64,000 nucleotides of DNA from Guillardia theta CCMP2712 (lineage: Eukaryota > Protista > Cryptophyta). The stretch covers positions 124,001 through 188,000 of the forward strand of contig NW_005434630.1 of the NCBI RefSeq assembly GCF_000315625.1, read 5' to 3'. Made by a program: the position numbers and the translations under genes. Every line of letters begins with the position of its first letter. Within the stretch, counting starts at the first letter, position 1. Positions 3,101-10,434 of the stretch are shown here, one piece after another. Below the pieces are notes generated by a model, which worked only from the letters and a program-made list of their open reading frames with translations, did not search any database and had not been told where the DNA came from.

Positions 3101-6100
3101 CTATTCATCAATGTCGAACATTCTCGTGGGCTTTCTCCGCTCCCCAGTGTTTCGAAAGCGAACGTCTCTCCCTTCCCCGTCAGCCCCATCTCCTCTAGCC
3201 GTCTCACTGCCAATCCTGTCAGTCTCCGCGTCCCCCTTCCTCCTCCTCCTCCCCCTCCTCCCCCGCCTCATCGACCCTCTCCTGCGCCCTCTCCTCTTGC
3301 TGATGCCCCCCCACATCTCCTCTCCCTCTCCCTCTCCCTCTCCCCCTCCCCCTCCCCCTCCTCCTCCTCCTCTTACTGGTGGCATCTCGTCTGTCTTTTC
3401 CACCTTTCTTTTGTTTCTTGCGGAACTGCCAGTAGAAGACAACGAGCATNNNNNNNNNNNNNNNNNNNNNNNNNNNNNNNNNNNNNNNNNNNNNNNNNNN
3501 NNNNNNNNNNNNNNNNNNNNNNNNNNNNNNNNNNNNNNNNNNNNNNNNNTAGGAAGAGATAGGAGCGGGAGGGGAGGGGGGTGGGAAAGGAAGGGAAAGA
3601 TCGTCTGGACATTCACCGGCTGCCGGATGTTCTCTAGCAACGAGATGTCCCATTCATGAGGAGGAGAATTAAACTCGGCAGATCGCATATCGTACAACCA
3701 CAAGTCCTGCTGATTGTTACCGCCCCAGTGGTCTTCCCTCCCTCCCTCCTCTCCCCTCCTCCTCCTCCTCTCCCCTCCTCTTAGTTCTCTTGGTTTACCT
3801 TCTGTCCTCCCATAACTAGGACGGATGATTCCATTCCTGCTACCTGCTCATGGGATCAGATCCGCCCAATCAAACATCTCCTCCTCTCCTCCTCTCCTCC
3901 TCTCCTCCTCTCCCCTCTCCCCTCTCCCCTCTCCCCTCTCCTCTTCTTCTCGGCTCCTCATCATGCTCCTACTCTTTCCTCTGCTCTTGCTCTTCTTCTC
4001 AGCCCCTGTTCATCCTCCCCTCCTCCCTTCCTTTAATCCTTTCCCTTCCTCCTCCCCTTCTCTTTTGTTTCTCTCTTTCCCTCCTCCTTCCCCCCTTGTC
4101 CTCGCCCCATTCGACTGACCTGAAGGCTGGTTTGCCCGACGCTCTTGAGGGGGATGTACTGGACAAGGGGAGGAAGAGAACGAAAGTTTGCGGGTATACG
4201 TGAGATGTTGTAGCTGAGTACCAGAGTCAAATTGTGAAACTAGTCAAGATGTGCAAGACACAGCAGAAGGGAAGGGTCCGAGGTCGAGCACACGTCAACG
4301 TAAAGAGAGCAGCAGATATTTGCCATGGGGTGCGGGAAATCATAATTTTTTGTGACAAGTGGAGAAGTTATTCAAAGAGATTTCAAACATCACTGTGTCA
4401 TCTTGAAATATCTCACATGCTCAGCGACGTTATGGAACTCCCGCTCGCCGCTGCCGCGAGATAGTCTTTCATCTTCCATCCAAAGGTGAGTTTCAGCAAA
4501 CATGCTGATTTCAGAGATTGATAGAAGAACAACTTGTCGGAAGGCGAAAACGCAAACCATATCACCCACAACACTGATATCAAAAAGGCTAGAAAGAAAG
4601 TTTGCACTGAAGGACATAGAAAGAAATATGAATCAGAGAAGAAACAAAACAAACATCGCAGTCTCAACATATTTGAGGCATCGAACTTGCGAGCAGACTC
4701 AACATTGAAGATACCAGAGCGACGTGCACTGGAACGTGCTTGCCCGATGTCTCATCGACGATGTTGATTTCTTGCAGAATCCTGCATTTCACTTGCGCAG
4801 AGTTGGTCTTGGGATCGAAGTCCCGACGAATCTTGAAACGACAAGATCAACAGCAACAAAGACACGTCGCTCTCATCAAATAATGTCATGAACGTTTCCT
4901 CTTGCTCCCAACTGCTCAGACATACTCAGGAATTTTCTCTACCTGTAAGACTAGAGTCTGCCCAGCCTTGGTTCCAACATACATGAGGTGAAATCGAGAC
5001 CGTTTGATCTCAGCGTCCAGCGCCATCGACGCCACCTGGCGTATCAAAACTCAAAGGTTTGTAAAGCAATGTTTCAAGACAATCATTTGAAGACGAAGTG
5101 TCATATCGCATCTGTTGAGCTTGCAACGCATCTAATCCCTTGCATTCCTCTCTCAATATTCATCCTTCGCAACATTCTCTCTCCTTTCTCATCTATCGAG
5201 CAACACAGCCTTCTACCATGTCAATCTCACATAGAAGAAGAAGACAAGGTTCTGCGTGCTTAGTGACATTGGAACAAATTTAAAATAACCTCGAAGTCAA
5301 CCAATCGCGTTTCCGGTTTCTTCTCTCCTCTCGATTTGCCTTGCTTGTCGATCACAAATTTGACGCATTGGACCTGTTACAAGTGAGGTAAATGACGACC
5401 CCCTGACTTGGGAAACCACAAACATCATCTTTTTCATCAACAAATCATCATCATCATCAGCAGCAGCAGCAGCAGCAACTTCATCTTCACCTGCTGCATT
5501 GACGCCTGTCTGATGTCCATGGCGCTCAGGCCTCCACTCCATCCCGCGAGGATCCAGTGGGTGTCAGGGAGGGCAGCGATATCCTCTATCTTGACATCCA
5601 CCGCAGGCTGCAGGCTCTGATCGATATGTCTAGAGGATACTAAAGATCCATTGAGGAGCATCCAAAACATCCTCCCTGCTGCGTCCCCGGCGACGAGGTT
5701 GAGAGATCGGCCCTTCTGAACGAACTGCATTGAAGTGATCTCCTGCAGGGAACGAGGGTTAGTGTGACGACGAGCAACCCTCCTCCTCCTCACCGCAGGA
5801 GCGGATGTATTAGAGACTTCAAAGCTCCTGTCGCTGATTTTGTCGATCCTCTGAGTTCGAGTGGGAAAGAAATCGTGAACGTGGGACAGGACTGGCTTCC
5901 AGCCGTTCCTGCCAATCTTTCGCGCCTGCTTCAACGCGATCCTCGACGACGCAGGACTGATCTCAAACTTGGGAGGAACAGGAAAGGAATGTACACGTAC
6001 TTCGCCATGCTTGCTCCCGGTCGCAATGTAGCAGACGTTCCCTAGAGGAGGAGAGACTGCCAGTGACGTGACGCTCGAGGCATGTCCACAGGGCCAGGAG

Positions 6101-6605
6101 GACAGTACGTGAGCAGCGTTGTCAAGAACATGCAGGAAGCCCTTGGAGTCAACAGCAACCATCAACCTCGTTATTGCTGAATGCGCGTCCATGGTGAAGA
6201 AGGGAAGCCACCGCAACATGGTTGCCTTGCCCTTCAGCTTCAGCTGCGTCTGCATGGTGAGTTTGAGACCATCCTCGTAGGGATCATCGGCGAATCCTCC
6301 AAGGCGGTTCTGTCAGGATGGGGGGGGGGGACAGGGTCAAGTGAAAGCATAGCAATGCAGCAGCGTTCTACCTTATACTTCCTGTCCTGCCTCCGAGCGT
6401 CGCTCTTGCACTCACGATCATCAGGACTGCATTGAGGGACTTGGTCCTTCAACATCTGAACAAGCTTCTCCTGCGCAGCCAGCTCTTCCTGCAGCTCCTT
6501 AAGCTTCTCCCTCGCCTCTACGATCCTGCTGTCATTGCCCCGCGCTCGTACCATGAACATGGTCAAGACGCTGAGGATCAGCAGGAGAGACACTGAACGA
6601 CTCAT
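3101..6605 (-). CDS. Signal peptide + coiled coil + WD40-like beta-propeller + C-terminal TM protein (resembles plant At1g75140-type membrane protein); multi-exon, spans the gap
   Basis: Signal peptide MSRSVSLLLILSVLTMFMVRARG and coiled coil EAREKLKELQEELAAQEKLVQ. Propeller-like blades MVAVDSKGFLHVLD, GHASSVTSLAVSP..IATGSKHGEVRVH, LVAGDAAGRMFW, VLVMGG and DLWLYDMRS. TM end plus basic stop-transfer MLVVFYWQFRKKQKK at ~3380-3448. Joining the exons into one gene is inference. Confidence 0.55.
3450..3549. other. Assembly gap (100 N)
   Basis: Run of n between purine-rich and pyrimidine-rich low-complexity flanks. Confidence 0.99.
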
Positions 6606-6994
6606 CGTCCCTTCCACTCTCGTGTGTCTCCTCCTCCTCTCCTCCTCCTCTTCCTCTCTCGCGCCCTTCCCTTCTGCGTTTTCGCTTCCGCTACCCTCTG
6701 TTTTCGCCTTGGGAATGCTAGGGACCTCGTACCTCTATCTCCCCGACCTACTTCTAATCCATTAATACCTGACTTATGAAATATCCTACCTTAAACCCCC
6801 AACTCACTGCACTCGAAAGGTGAGTCACTGTAGGACGAAAATGCAGAATTCGTAGGAGGAGCGAAAGTAGAGGCGACATTTGGAAAGAGGAAGCGATCTA
6901 GCAGCAGGCTGAAGGGAGCAGGAGACTGAAGGAGGGAGAAGAGGAAGACTAGGAGCTGAAGGCTAAGAAGGAGAGTTTTAGAGGCGTTTCCCCT

Positions 6995-8851
6995 TTACTG
7001 TTGATGACACCATTCTCTTGTAGCTCCTCTGCTGCTTCGCCGCTCGAATCTTTCACCTCCATCTTCCTCTTCTTCACTCGAGTCGTCCTCTTCCTCCTTC
7101 CTTTCTTGCTGGCTGTCTCCATCCGCTTTCTTCTCGGCACCTGCCTCCATCCTCTTCTTCTTCTCCTCTTGCGCGTGCAACTCTGCATGCAGGGTTTCGA
7201 GTTCTTTCTCAAAATCATTCAGTTCGTCGGGCTCCTCAACAGCCCTGCTGGCACTCGTTGCGACGGGCGAGCCAGCGCTCGAGCTTCCGTCGGAATGCTT
7301 CGAGTCCTCCTCGTTGAAGTACCTGGGAGCAGCATCGTACTGCAAGGGCGACCTTCTCTCTGGACTCCTTGACTGTGAGGAAGCCCTCCGCACCCTTGCC
7401 TGCACTTCAACGTCAGAGGAAGGGAGCAGCACCATGCCTAACCACCTTTCCAACATGCGCTAGTCTTCGCATCAAAGGAGGAAACTCGCCCATGATCTCT
7501 TCGAAGTCTACTCTCATCAGTTGAAACAATTCTGCTGGCTCCGTGGAACATTTTCCAGTTGCATCCTGCCCCAACGAGACTACATCTGCAGTCCGCAACT
7601 CCGCAACTGTCAGCGCAACCTCCCCGAAGAAATCGCCTGAAAATATAGTGAGGAGCAAGAGTGAACAGGAGAAGGATTAGAGGGGGTCAAGAATTCGTCC
7701 GAGGGACACCAACAAGTTGCAAGACACAATCCAAGAGCAATTCTAGAGCAACAAAGTCATGAATTACCTGTAGTTAATCTATCCACACGCTCCCCGTCCA
7801 CAAGAATTTCCATCGCTCCCGAGTTGATAAAGTACATGCTGTCCCCTTGGTCGCCGGCATTGATTAAAGCCTCACCCTTTGCCACCCTCACCAGCCGCAA
7901 CTTCCTCGTGATTTTCTCCAACAGCATTGGATCGATGTTGGCAAACAGTGGCAATTTCCTGATCAACAAGAACGCACGATGCGAAGCATGGAGGTTTCCT
8001 GGCCCCGACCCCTCCGACTCTTCAGGTGCCTCGACAATCCATGGATGCTGCTGACATTGACGAGCCGAAAATCTCTGAGATGGATCGACGACCAGCATCT
8101 TCGATATCAAATCTTTGGCATCTGGAGATACTCCGTCCCAATACGGAGAGGGAAAATCATACTGACCTTGGCAAATCTGTTCGAATAAGACAGAAGTCTT
8201 TTGATCAAAGAACGGAGGAAATCCACATAGCATTACGTACATCACAATACCCACTGACCAGATGTCAACCTCTGGTCCATAATAGATGGATTTGCGCTTG
8301 GGATCAATGATCTCCGGTGCCACATAGGTCGGTGTACCACATAGTGTCTTCATGCTTGATTGTTCGGTAGTGATGGAGGATAGTCCAAAGTCTGCAAGCT
8401 TGATTGTATAGTAGTCTGGTGATTCAGGATTGCTAGATGCGTACAATAGATTCTCAGGTTTGATGTCTCTATGGGCAATTGCTATGCTGTGCAGGTATGC
8501 TACAGCACTCAAAACATCAGATATCATCACGATGGCATCCCTTTCCTGGAAATGATCCATCTCAATGATCCTATCCATGACTGTGCCACCAGTCATCAGA
8601 TCCAAGATCAAGTACGTCTTGCTTCTCTCGTGATAGACTCCGTGCAGCCTGACGATGTTGGGATGCGAGACCTTGAGCATGGCGTTGATCTCCTTCTCCA
8701 ATGCCGCGGGCTTGAAAAGAGAAGATCGTTTGTCAATGATCTTGACGGCACAGGTCATTCCTGTGATCTTGTCCTTGGCCTGTTTCACAGTTGCATACGA
8801 CCCCTTCCCGATCGTCTTCCCCAAGACCAGGTGCCGCGGCGGTCTCTGCAT
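6995..8851 (-). CDS. CaMK1-like Ser/Thr kinase fused to C-terminal cyclic-nucleotide-binding domain and acidic/coiled tail
   Basis: Kinase motifs GKGSYATVK, AVKIIDK, HRDIKPENLL, DFG, TLCGTPTYVAPE, DIWSVG and LCGFPPF. CNB domain LPLF..GDQGDSMYFINSG..G|DFFGEVAL..RTADVVS. Introns at 7637-7767 (GTAATT..TTCAG) and ~7401-7445. Confidence 0.9.
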
Positions 8852-9360
8852 CGCGCAACACGGCCTGAGTAAAGACAACCACCCCTACCCCTCGCTTGCG
8901 ACCAGTCACCCGCTGTCGTAACCCCCCTTCTTCTGCGAATCACATAACCACCCCTCCCTCCGAGTGTGTTAAACCTGGTGTTACACGAACCTCAACCACA
9001 GAAAAAGGTACCCCACCCCTAGCTCGAACGCGCATTGCCTCCAACACCCCATGAACTCACCAGGGGGTGGTCCTATCTGTTTGTATCTCCATGAGGTGGT
9101 AGGGGTCAATTCCTCTGGATACCAACAGGGTAGGGTGGTGAGATGGATTGCTGACCTTCGGCTGACATAAAAAGACTTCTATGATGGAAGAAGTCTAAAA
9201 ATGTTATCCTTTCAAGAATTATTTATAATATATATTTTTCAAAAGTTGTACTCTGGAGGCTCCGGAGCTGTCAGCGGAGATCAAAATCCACAAGATCACG
9301 ACTTCTCGCACCCAATACCATCACAACCTCGTGATAACAACATTTTATAGAATGGCTTGT

Positions 9361-10100: not shown

Positions 10101-10209
10101 ACGGTACCCGTAGTACCTTGTCGGACCGTGCTGCTACGGTCCCACGGCGGTCACGTTCAGTGTCGGAGTTTCAGTACCATTGTCTGTACGGCGCCGTTCA
10201 AGTCTGTTT

Positions 10210-10434
10210 GATGAGACTGAACCACCACCTTTGCCTTTAATTCAACGAGATGGACAGTATTTTGAAGTCGATCGCGTTTTGGCTCGTCGTGGAAAAGGTA
10301 ATCGTGTGCAGTACTTGGTTCGTTGGGAAGGGTATGACAAGTCGTCGGATGATTCTTGGTTATCTACACGCGAATTTCGGACTCCAGAGTTGAGGAAAAT
10401 GATTCGTGATTTCAATCTTGTGAATGCTCCTTGA
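10210..10434 (+). pseudogene. Chromodomain fragment (retrotransposon integrase-type)
   Basis: Aromatic-cage pattern YFEVDRVL..YLVRWEGY..DSW, lacking an upstream coding frame. Confidence 0.8.

What the first reader, a model, noticed from the sequence alone, without database searches (positions are those of the whole stretch)
6995..8851. CaMK1-type kinase with a C-terminal cyclic-nucleotide-binding domain: a candidate novel cNMP-gated kinase
Seen: a complete CaMK-family kinase domain followed about 25 aa later by an intact CNB domain with the phosphate-binding cassette FGEVAL..RTADV. Known: PKA and PKG are AGC kinases with CNB domains N-terminal or on a separate subunit. CaMK1 has an autoinhibitory/CaM-binding tail at this position, and Thr after the cassette Arg is associated with cGMP preference in PKG. 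Inference: an independently evolved cNMP-regulated kinase in which the CNB domain replaces Ca/CaM control.
Basis: partly seen in the sequence, partly recalled or inferred. Interest (0 to 1): 0.7.

Follow-up and report, generated by a model that had tools for sequence, protein, structure and literature searches.

The report
CaMK-type kinase with cyclic-nucleotide sensor
A gene of the cryptophyte alga Guillardia theta encodes a calmodulin-kinase-type enzyme whose calmodulin-docking segment is replaced by an intact cyclic-nucleotide-binding domain; it belongs to a conserved but untested cryptophyte gene family that is probably a separate way of putting a kinase under cAMP/cGMP control.

Summary
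On the minus strand, 8851..6995, lies a three-exon gene of Guillardia theta CCMP2712, the front part of public model GUITHDRAFT_140187. It encodes a complete, catalytically intact CaMK1-like kinase domain (aa 10-272). A short CaMK1-like junction follows, then one canonical cyclic-nucleotide-binding (CNB) domain (aa ~289-425) split by a 131-nt intron.

The phosphate-binding cassette (FGEVAL..RTA) is invariant at its Gly, Glu, Arg and Ala in 39 homologues. After the CNB come a conserved basic motif (ARVRRAS), a disordered tail and a CaaX-like end (CHQQ).

Transcript-derived proteins of at least eight cryptophyte genera have the same kinase-then-CNB order. G. theta itself has at least six to eight paralogous loci. 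An AlphaFold model puts the first CNB helix where the autoinhibitory helix sits in autoinhibited CaMKII, DAPK and CASK.

Most likely this is a membrane-tethered CaMK-type kinase released from autoinhibition by cAMP or cGMP. Ligand, specificity and activation are untested. The Thr in RTA is weak evidence for cGMP.

The public 971-aa model wrongly merges a downstream gene. The sequences are public and auto-named "cGMP-dependent protein kinase". This scan had already reported two paralogues elsewhere in this genome. RNA reads could not be obtained.

The parts
7768..8851 (-). Exon 1 (1084 nt): start ATG 8851, kinase domain, junction and the first half of the CNB domain. It ends ...RLTT G|.
   Evidence: ORF list and sequence. 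P0121 and P0001 map here at 99.7% and 92%. Splice-site letters checked.
7637..7767 (-). Intron 1, 131 nt, GT..AG, phase 1, inside the CNB beta-barrel.
   Evidence: It is spliced out in Hanusia P0001 and in the family transcripts. The same split position occurs in paralogous loci on C32, C13 and C28 (two loci).
7446..7636 (-). Exon 2 (191 nt): second half of the CNB domain (phosphate-binding cassette, B and C helices). It ends ...AHVGK.
7400..7445 (-). Intron 2, 46 nt, GT..AG.
   Evidence: About 40 homologues read ...IGQ|ARVKRAA with no insert. Several genomic gene calls read through an intron at the same spot (IGQ|VL...). Hanusia P0001 retains it in frame. The public model P0121 splices it.
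6995..7399 (-). Exon 3 (405 nt): ARVRRAS motif, disordered Ser-rich and acidic tail, CHQQ end, stop TAA 6997..6995. The unfused product is 559 aa.
   Evidence: ORF 6995..7456.
8036..8824 (-). Protein kinase domain, aa 10-272. Residues present: G15xG17, K37, E54, H127-R-D129, N134, D154-F-G, activation-loop T169, A178-P-E.
   Evidence: Pfam Pkinase 245.7 bits. CaMK1D and CaMKI at 1e-74. Catalytic residues invariant or nearly so in 39 sequences. Fold match Z about 35 to CaMKII, DAPK and CASK.
8345..8347 (-). Codon of activation-loop Thr169. It is aligned with the Thr of M-S-T-A-C-G-T-P in CaMK1D, the site phosphorylated by CaMKK in CaMKI (this last point is established knowledge).
   Evidence: Invariant in 39 sequences; alignment to CaMK1D.
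7931..8035 (-). Junction, aa 273-307: a remnant of the start of the CaMK1 regulatory segment, then the first CNB helix (aa 289-299, SHRAFLLIRKL). This helix is the candidate autoinhibitory helix.
   Evidence: The CaMK1D alignment runs to ...KKMHSSHRA / ...KNIHESVSA. Model residues 1..306/307 overlay autoinhibited CaMKII, DAPK and CASK including their regulatory helix. F294, L296 and I297 are invariant.
7446..7987 (-). CNB domain, aa ~289-425, interrupted by intron 1.
   Evidence: Pfam cNMP_binding 50 bits, above the 27.5 cut-off. Plasmodium PKG CNB-D is the best solved relative, 2e-25 for the whole chain. CNB-only model pLDDT 83.9. Foldseek probability 1.00 to HCN, CNG, MloK1 and PfPKA-R CNB domains; TM by target 0.81 and rmsd 2.5 to MloK1.
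7581..7628 (-). Phosphate-binding cassette F365-G-E-V-A-L-T-V-A-E-L-R376-T-A-D-V380.
   Evidence: Sequence. F365, G366, E367, L370, R376 and A378 are invariant in 39 sequences.
7379..7399 (-). Conserved basic motif A426-R-V-R-R-A-S432, directly after the CNB C-helix. It is a candidate (pseudo)substrate or regulatory site.
   Evidence: The motif [AS]RV[KR]RA[AS] recurs in most subfamilies. Its function is inferred only.
6998..7009 (-). C-terminal CHQQ: Cys at position -4, a CaaX-like lipid-anchor signal.
   Evidence: 21 of 91 family sequences, from several subfamilies, end in a polybasic run plus C-x-Q-[QS]; one ends ...ACHQQ.

Best explanation
This is a nuclear gene of Guillardia theta for a 559-aa, probably membrane-tethered Ser/Thr kinase. 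It has a CaMK1-type catalytic domain and one C-terminal cyclic-nucleotide-binding domain.

Shown:
- The gene structure.
- An active-looking CaMK1-like kinase.
- A canonical CNB fold with all ligand-contacting cassette residues conserved.
- The same architecture across cryptophytes and in several G. theta paralogues.
- The CNB begins where the CaM-binding helix of CaMK1 would be.
- In the AlphaFold model, the first CNB helix lies where the autoinhibitory helix lies in autoinhibited CaMKII, DAPK and CASK.

Inferred:
- Without ligand, that helix blocks the substrate groove, possibly helped by the conserved RV[KR]RA[A/S] pseudosubstrate-like motif after the CNB C-helix.
- Binding of cAMP or cGMP to the cassette reorients the N-terminal helices and the B/C helices of the CNB domain, as it does in PKA-R, PKG and Epac. 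This releases the kinase.
- Full activity may also need phosphorylation of the invariant activation-loop Thr169.
- The CHQQ end suggests lipid anchoring.

Which nucleotide binds cannot be read from the sequence.
For: - Organism and gene: P0121 (= XP_005830713.1, GUITHDRAFT_140187) maps at about 100% identity.
- Domains.
- CaMK1 affinity.
- CNB relatives and fold.
- Invariant G366, E367, R376 and A378, and invariant T169 and catalytic residues, in 39 sequences.
- Splice joins confirmed by orthologous and paralogous transcripts.
- All 104 proteins with both domains are kinase-then-CNB.
- CNB-bearing kinases fall in one clade (SH-aLRT 99) nested among CNB-less CaMK1-like kinases.
- Full-length model pLDDT 82.8 and pTM 0.78; residues 1..306/307 overlay autoinhibited CaMKII (2vz6, 2bdw), DAPK1/2 and CASK with their regulatory helix, Z about 35.
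- At least six to eight paralogous loci in the genome.
- 78 cyclase-domain matches in the genome, so cNMP synthesis is plentiful.
- CaaX-like end shared across subfamilies.
Against: - No ligand binding or activity data exist.
- The autoinhibitory placement of the helix rests on an AlphaFold model with a shallow 39-sequence alignment and only middling confidence there (pLDDT about 55-76 for aa 281-300). It may echo autoinhibited CaMK structures in AlphaFold's training data.
- Thr377 is Ile or Val in some paralogues, and the window's own junction (VEAPEESEGSGPGNL) is less CaMK1-like than the family consensus.
- C-x-Q-Q is not a classical CaaX box, because its a2 position is not aliphatic.
Confidence: 0.6

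Rival explanations
1. The CNB domain is a ligand-independent module, a pseudo-receptor. It would serve only as a fixed autoinhibitory, dimerisation or docking domain, or bind a different small molecule. Precedents are the degenerate CNB-C of Plasmodium PKG, the CNB-homology domains of KCNH channels, and bacterial CRP/FNR relatives that sense other ligands.
For: CNB folds without cNMP binding are well known (established knowledge). The zELK CNB-homology domain appears among the fold matches (rank 41). No binding data exist.
Against: The residues that such pseudo-receptors typically lose are invariant in 39 sequences spanning several subfamilies: cassette Gly366, Glu367, Arg376 and Ala378. The cassette length is canonical. 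The best sequence match is the cGMP-binding CNB-D of Plasmodium PKG.
Confidence: 0.17
2. The kinase is still switched by Ca2+/calmodulin, and the CNB domain adds a second input, making it a coincidence detector. The basic amphipathic stretch HRAFLLIRKLPLF would still bind calmodulin.
For: The kinase and the first ~15 aa of the regulatory segment are CaMK1-like. The stretch is basic and hydrophobic, with F294 and F303 ten residues apart (sequence).
Against: Sequence similarity to CaMK1D ends before its CaM-binding helix. The stretch aligns with, and is modelled as, the regular N-terminal helix of the CNB fold, and it contains a Pro. The family alignment shows no separate CaM-binding segment.
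Confidence: 0.12
3. The public 971-aa model is right. The kinase-CNB would be only the N-terminal half of a larger protein that continues, through further introns, into a WD40-like region.
For: That is how the genome is annotated (GUITHDRAFT_140187). In Hanusia phi the two coding regions carry the same contig or gene prefix (768743), so they are neighbours there too.
Against: - The window has an in-frame stop at 6995 directly after a CHQQ end that other family members share.
- Family transcripts are 474-560 aa and are marked complete.
- Hanusia has two separate ORFs: P0001, ending in a stop, and P0368, with its own Met and signal peptide. P0368 is matched by the window ORF 6617..6240, MEGTMSRSVSLLLILSVLTMFMVRARG.
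- The public model skips that signal peptide.
Confidence: 0.05

Closest known systems
CaMKI / CaMK1D (Ca2+/calmodulin-dependent protein kinase I, CaMK group)
   Same: Closest kinase domain by sequence (1e-74 to 1e-82) and by fold. The activation-loop Thr is conserved. The first ~15 aa after HPWI resemble the start of the CaMK1 regulatory segment.
   Different: The CaM-binding helix is absent. A CNB domain starts at that point. The protein has a CaaX-like C-terminus.
PKG (cGMP-dependent protein kinase, AGC group), including Plasmodium PKG
   Same: A single chain holds both a CNB domain and a Ser/Thr kinase. The CNB cassette is of the R-T-A type and is most similar to PfPKG CNB-D. Public databases auto-name the protein PKG.
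   Different: The kinase is CaMK-type, not AGC-type: 26-34% identity to PKG-architecture kinases against 45-48% to CaMK1-like ones. It has one CNB, C-terminal to the kinase, instead of two to four N-terminal ones. It has no N-terminal dimerisation or autoinhibitory segment, and no AGC tail was seen.
CDPK (calcium-dependent protein kinases of plants, apicomplexans and ciliates)
   Same: Same evolutionary logic. A CaMK-type kinase is followed by a short autoinhibitory junction and a sensor domain fused in cis at the C-terminus. The first helix of the sensor region acts as the inhibitor (established knowledge for CDPKs; inferred here).
   Different: The sensor is a CNB domain, not an EF-hand calmodulin-like domain. 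The presumed signal is cAMP or cGMP, not Ca2+.
PKA regulatory subunits RI / RII
   Same: A CNB domain lies next to a basic inhibitor motif whose P0 residue alternates between Ala (pseudosubstrate) and Ser (substrate). Here that is RVKRAA in most members and RVRRAS in the window gene.
   Different: The motif lies C-terminal to the CNB, not N-terminal. It is in cis with a CaMK-type kinase. Its inhibitor role is only my inference.
CAMK-group kinases with a cNMP-binding domain, listed in the Phytophthora infestans kinome (Judelson & Ah-Fong 2010, PMC3019232, Table 2)
   Same: That table lists the cNMP-binding accessory domain on AGC and CAMK kinases.
   Different: The paper does not describe the CAMK case. 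I could not find the entry in its supplement, so the domain order and any homology to the cryptophyte family are unknown.

Membership tests
Eukaryotic protein kinase, CaMK group, CaMK1-like | Complete catalytic domain with the Gly loop, VAIK Lys, alphaC Glu, HRD, DFG and APE. | tested here: met
   Pfam Pkinase 245.7 bits over profile positions 3-263 of 263. K37, E54, H127-R-D129, N134, D154-F-G and A178-P-E are read in the sequence and are (nearly) invariant in 39 homologues.
Eukaryotic protein kinase, CaMK group, CaMK1-like | Closest similarity to CaMK-group kinases rather than AGC or other groups. | tested here: met
   The top 60 solved relatives are all CaMK-group (CaMK1D, CaMKI, CaMKIV, DCLK1, CaMKII, CDPK, CHK2). 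Identity is 45-48% to CaMK1-like kinases against 26-34% to PKG-type kinases. Fold match Z about 35.
Eukaryotic protein kinase, CaMK group, CaMK1-like | Activation-loop Thr equivalent to the CaMKK site of CaMKI. | tested here: met
   T169 is invariant. It aligns with the Thr in the MSTACGTPGY stretch of CaMK1D. Phosphorylation itself was not tested.
Eukaryotic protein kinase, CaMK group, CaMK1-like | C-terminal autoinhibitory segment that includes a Ca2+/calmodulin-binding helix. | tested here: not met
   The alignment with CaMK1D ends about 15 aa after HPWI. From aa 289 the sequence is a CNB domain. It is therefore CaMK1-like in its catalytic domain only, not a calmodulin-dependent kinase by architecture.
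PKG (cGMP-dependent protein kinase, AGC) | AGC-type catalytic domain. | tested here: not met
   no AGC kinase among the best 60 solved relatives, and 87-132 bits to PKG-architecture proteins against 250-275 bits to CaMK1-like ones.
PKG (cGMP-dependent protein kinase, AGC) | Tandem CNB domains N-terminal to the kinase, preceded by an autoinhibitory or dimerisation segment. | tested here: not met
   There is a single CNB, C-terminal to the kinase. The kinase starts at aa 10.
PKG (cGMP-dependent protein kinase, AGC) | Activation by cGMP. | not testable with these tools
   This needs a biochemical assay. The R-T-A cassette is compatible with cGMP but not diagnostic.
Cyclic-nucleotide-binding domain (Pfam PF00027, CAP/PKA-R/PKG/HCN type) | Profile match above the curated threshold. 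| tested here: met
   50.0 bits against a cut-off of 27.5 on the spliced product. Homologues score 48-53 bits.
Cyclic-nucleotide-binding domain (Pfam PF00027, CAP/PKA-R/PKG/HCN type) | Eight-stranded beta-barrel with the cassette helix, flanked by N-terminal helices and B/C helices. | tested here: met
   The CNB-only model has pLDDT 83.9 and the expected order of strands and helices. Foldseek probability is 1.00 to HCN, CNG, MloK1, SthK and PfPKA-R CNB domains.
Cyclic-nucleotide-binding domain (Pfam PF00027, CAP/PKA-R/PKG/HCN type) | Cassette residues that hold the ribose phosphate: G-E ... R-[ST/A]-A with canonical spacing. | tested here: met
   F365-G-E-V-A-L-(5 aa)-R376-T-A. G366, E367, R376 and A378 are invariant in 39 sequences.
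Cyclic-nucleotide-binding domain (Pfam PF00027, CAP/PKA-R/PKG/HCN type) | Actual binding of cAMP or cGMP. | not testable with these tools
   ITC or fluorescence binding on recombinant protein is required.
CDPK-type sensor-fused CaMK (considered as an analogue only) | EF-hand calmodulin-like domain after the junction. | tested here: not met
   Pfam finds no EF-hand match in any family member scanned.

The most novel reading that the evidence does not exclude
Cryptophytes would have invented a third, independent class of cyclic-nucleotide-dependent protein kinase. It is a lipid-anchored CaMK1-type kinase in which a single C-terminal CNB domain has replaced the calmodulin-binding helix. The first helix of the CNB doubles as the CaMK autoinhibitory helix, so cAMP or cGMP directly does the job that Ca2+/calmodulin does in CaMKI. 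Paralogues with Thr, Ile or Val after the cassette Arg would differ in nucleotide preference.
Probability: 0.45. Interest if true: 0.65.

Novelty: new variant of a known kind. Interest (0 to 1): 0.5.

Why it matters
All biochemically understood cNMP-dependent protein kinases (PKA, PKG) use AGC catalytic domains, with the CNB domains N-terminal or on a separate subunit.

A conserved family that joins an intact CNB domain to the regulatory junction of a CaMK1-type kinase would show that cNMP control of kinases evolved more than once. It would also show that the CNB module can replace calmodulin as the releaser of a CaMK autoinhibitory helix.

It would give cryptophyte cell biology a concrete cNMP effector. 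The genome has dozens of cyclase domains, and cryptophytes show light-driven behaviour.

It would also give protein engineers a compact, single-chain, cNMP-switchable CaMK scaffold.

The practical by-product is a corrected gene model: the public 971-aa protein is two genes.

Tried and rejected

2. Joined product. The spliced product was always referred to through the public protein P0121, whose first 540 aa equal exons 1-3 up to the annotated extra donor. The full 559-aa unfused product was never assembled or searched.

3. Exhaustive profile search with the junction+CNB profile, to find the architecture outside cryptophytes. The best 150 were swamped by proteins with 3-15 CNB repeats. Only family members and one 811-aa kinase-then-3xCNB protein (P0303, unnamed source) had the kinase first. 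Absence elsewhere is therefore not shown.

4. ESM Atlas. Clusters with Pkinase + cNMP_binding are labelled mostly Chlorophyta or Ciliophora, but domain order and kinase group are not given, so this neither extends nor limits the family.

5. Looking for the P. infestans CAMK+cNMP entry in the paper's supplement. Not found within a reasonable number of look-ups.

6. Mapping a G. theta MMETSP paralogue transcript (P0135) to a locus, as within-species evidence. The match was only partial, so I dropped it.

7. The careful tree search did not finish in 300 s. Only the quick IQ-TREE tree with SH-aLRT support is reported. I left out rows with under 240 kinase-profile positions, exact duplicates, and most proteins numbered above P0135.

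8. Coordinates of the AlphaFold models are not exposed, so contacts between the kinase, helix 289-299 and the RVRRAS motif could not be measured.

9. Rejected: reading Thr377 as proof of cGMP specificity.

10. Rejected: the 971-aa fused model.
Full report
**What is in the sequence**

The finding lies on the minus strand. A 373-aa open frame (8878..7757) holds a kinase domain and the first half of a CNB domain. An 81-aa frame (7658..7413) holds the rest of the CNB, with GDFFGEVALTVAELRTADV. A 153-aa frame (7456..6995) holds a Ser-rich and acidic tail.

Reading the DNA gives the following gene structure:
- Exon 1, 8851..7768.
- Intron 1, 7767..7637 (131 nt, GT..AG, phase 1).
- Exon 2, 7636..7446.
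- Intron 2, 7445..7400 (46 nt, GT..AG).
- Exon 3, 7399..6995, ending in TAA.

The product is 559 aa.

The spliced product was handled by reference through a public protein (see below). The full 559-aa product was never assembled or searched.

**Organism and public record**

Exon 1 finds a 92% identical protein of Hanusia phi (P0001, 530 aa) and dozens of 50-63% identical proteins from cryptophyte transcriptomes. Nearly all of these carry Pkinase plus cNMP_binding.

The 90% cluster of P0001 also holds XP_005830713.1, which is GUITHDRAFT_140187 of Guillardia theta CCMP2712. It is 971 aa and UniRef names it 'cGMP-dependent protein kinase'. It maps to the window at about 100% identity and uses exactly the two introns above. 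The window is therefore G. theta nuclear DNA.

**Are the joins real?**

- Intron 1. The Hanusia transcript-derived protein reads ...VDRLTTGDFFGEVAL... straight across it. About 40 homologues do the same.
- Intron 2. Nearly all homologues read ...LAQIGQ|ARVKRAA... with no insert. Hanusia P0001 retains the intron in frame. Several prokaryote-style gene calls on environmental DNA run on into an intron at the same place (IGQ|VL...).
- The split inside the CNB lies at the same position in paralogous G. theta loci on contigs C32, C13 and C28 (two loci).

RNA reads of this gene itself could not be examined.

**The 3' end, and an annotation error**

The public 971-aa model avoids the stop at 6995 through further introns and continues into a WD40-like region at 6828..4416. 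Three results argue against this.

1. The window product ends ...REWCHQQ*. Of 91 family sequences, 21 from several subfamilies end in a polybasic run plus C-x-Q-[QS], for example KKKKACSQQ, KSKACHQQ, KSKMCVQS and KGWCSHQ. So 6995 is the family's normal C-terminus.
2. Complete family transcripts are 474-560 aa.
3. In Hanusia the downstream region is a separate ORF (P0368, 369 aa) with its own Met and signal peptide. It is matched in the window by the ORF 6617..6240, which begins MEGTMSRSVSLLLILSVLTMFMVRARG. The public model skips this start.

I conclude that the public model merges two genes.

**The kinase**

Pfam Pkinase scores 245.7 bits over the full profile. All catalytic motifs are present, and they are invariant or nearly so in 39 homologues.

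The best solved relatives are CaMK1D and CaMKI (1e-74), followed by CaMKIV, DCLK1, CaMKII, CDPKs and CHK2. No AGC kinase appears among the best 60.

By BLASTP, the domain is 45-48% identical (250-275 bits) to CNB-less CaMK1-like kinases. It is 26-34% identical (87-132 bits) to the kinase domains of thirteen PKG-architecture proteins, which have 3-4 N-terminal CNBs.

With a consensus-like family member, similarity to CaMK1D continues about 15 aa past HPWI...AGEASAKKMHSSHRA against ...AGDTALNKNIHESVSA. That is, it runs into the start of the CaMK1 regulatory segment and then stops. The activation-loop Thr (T169) is invariant.

**The CNB domain**

On the spliced product, cNMP_binding scores 50 bits against a cut-off of 27.5.

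The best solved relatives are the CNB domains of Plasmodium PKG. CNB-D, with FGERALLYDEPRTAS, is the best-aligned one. PKA-R, HCN and PKG I follow.

A CNB-only AlphaFold model (pLDDT 83.9) has the canonical helices, eight-stranded barrel and cassette helix. It matches HCN, CNG, MloK1, SthK and PfPKA-R CNB domains with Foldseek probability 1.00. Against MloK1, TM by target is 0.81 and rmsd is 2.5 A.

In two alignments of 39 sequences, G362, F365, G366, E367, L370, R376 and A378 are invariant. Those are the residues that hold the ribose phosphate in known CNB domains, so a ligand-blind pseudo-domain is unlikely.

The residue after the Arg is Thr in most members, but Ile or Val in some subfamilies. 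Thr or Ser at this place also occurs in cAMP-responsive CNBs (HCN, CAP; textbook knowledge). The nucleotide preference is therefore open.

**Family and distribution**

Every named member is a cryptophyte: Guillardia, Hanusia, Hemiselmis, Rhodomonas, Cryptomonas, Geminigera, Teleaulax and Baffinella. Two 'Siedleckia' entries cluster at over 90% with Teleaulax and look like contamination.

All 104 fetched proteins that hold both domains have the kinase first.

In a quick maximum-likelihood tree of 105 kinase domains, all 33 CNB-bearing rows fall in one clade (SH-aLRT 99) nested among CNB-less CaMK1-like kinases. The ten CNB-less rows inside that clade are mostly short fragments or truncated gene models. 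The careful search did not finish, and the rows left out are listed under Tried and rejected. This fits one origin of the fusion but does not prove it.

G. theta itself has further kinase-then-CNB loci on C32, C13, C28 (a tandem pair), C11, C24 and C40. It also has 78 matches to the nucleotide-cyclase domain.

Whether the architecture exists outside cryptophytes is not settled:
- An exhaustive profile search was swamped by multi-CNB proteins.
- The ESM Atlas lists Pkinase+cNMP clusters labelled Chlorophyta and Ciliophora, without domain order.
- The P. infestans kinome paper tabulates cNMP-binding domains on AGC and CAMK kinases without description (PMC3019232).
- A 2005 kinome paper still called the cNMP domain 'restricted to AGC kinases' apart from a trypanosomatid STE kinase (PMC1266030).
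- I found no paper that describes or tests the cryptophyte family.

**How it most likely works**

The full-length AlphaFold model (aa 1-450, 39-sequence alignment) has pLDDT 82.8 and pTM 0.78. Structural alignment overlays model residues 1..306/307 on autoinhibited CaMKII (2vz6, 2bdw), DAPK1/2 and CASK, right through their regulatory helix. Z is about 35, with 288-295 residues aligned at rmsd about 2.5 A.

So the first helix of the CNB domain (aa 289-299, SHRAFLLIRKL; F294, L296 and I297 invariant) is modelled where the CaMK autoinhibitory helix lies. In known CNB domains, the N-terminal helices and the B/C helices move relative to the barrel when the cassette binds ligand (established for PKA-R, PKG and Epac).

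The simplest mechanism is therefore that cNMP binding pulls this helix off the kinase. This is the same logic as Ca2+/CaM acting on CaMKI, or Ca2+ acting on the fused sensor of CDPKs.

A second conserved element may contribute. It is [AS]RV[KR]RA[AS], directly after the CNB C-helix: RVKRAA in most members and RVRRAS here. It looks like a basophilic pseudosubstrate or substrate pair, as in PKA RI and RII.

The C-x-Q-Q end, and MGILSKG at the N-terminus of the main clade (not in this gene), suggest lipid anchoring.

All of this paragraph beyond the model overlay is inference. Confidence in the model around aa 281-300 is only middling, and I could not inspect contacts.

**Verdict**

The independent CaMK-type origin and the replacement of the CaM-binding segment hold. 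The cGMP preference and the degree of novelty were overstated.
- It is a new variant of a known kind: CNB-regulated protein kinases. It is publicly deposited but uncharacterised.
- This scan had already reported two paralogues on other pieces of the same genome with the same reading. One of those notes led me to check the lipid-anchor end.

Noticed in passing
window 4416-6617 (minus strand): The public model GUITHDRAFT_140187 (971 aa) merges the kinase-CNB gene with a downstream gene. That gene has its own Met and signal peptide (ORF 6617..6240, MEGTMSRSVSLLLILSVLTMFMVRARG), then a coiled-coil-like stretch and a weakly WD40-like region. Hanusia phi has it as a separate 369-aa ORF (P0368).
   Followed up: yes
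window 10180-10434 (+): An 84-aa ORF with a chromodomain (Pfam Chromo, 33.8 bits). It may be part of a chromodomain protein or of a chromovirus-type retroelement.
   Followed up: partly
L028 (G000:C46:254302-257475) and L030 (G000:C6:886465-889674): G. theta ORFs that join an N-terminal CNB domain to a Cdc14-like dual-specificity phosphatase (DSPn + DSPc). This would be a cNMP-sensor-phosphatase fusion.
   Followed up: partly
L029 (G000:C99:218562-221732): An ORF of at least 832 aa, cut by the end of the locus, with a CNB domain followed by MORN repeats.
   Followed up: no
L006/L016 and L008/L011 (G000:C28:645743-653362): Two kinase-then-CNB paralogues sit in tandem about 4 kb apart on the same strand. 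Their Hanusia counterparts (P0015, P0023) share one contig or gene prefix, so the tandem arrangement seems conserved.
   Followed up: partly
P0303 (environmental protein, 811 aa): A distant, non-CaMK-like kinase domain (aa 87-345) followed by three CNB domains. This is another kinase-first CNB architecture, of unknown origin.
   Followed up: no
P0187-P0191 (about 650 aa, Logan/ENA assemblies): Outside the family, the nearest relatives of this CNB domain in the word-based search are TPR-repeat proteins with a CNB domain (31-37% identity).
   Followed up: no
Family members P0002-P0016, P0029, P0031 (N-termini): The main clade starts MGILSKG or MGIFxKG, a myristoylation-like MGxxxS/K start. Many of these also end in polybasic + CxQ[QS], suggesting dual lipidation. 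The window gene has only the C-terminal signal.
   Followed up: partly
P0001, P0018, P0025 (Hanusia and environmental transcripts): Several transcript-derived family proteins carry in-frame inserts exactly at the two intron positions. These are retained introns, so database lengths of family members are unreliable.
   Followed up: partly
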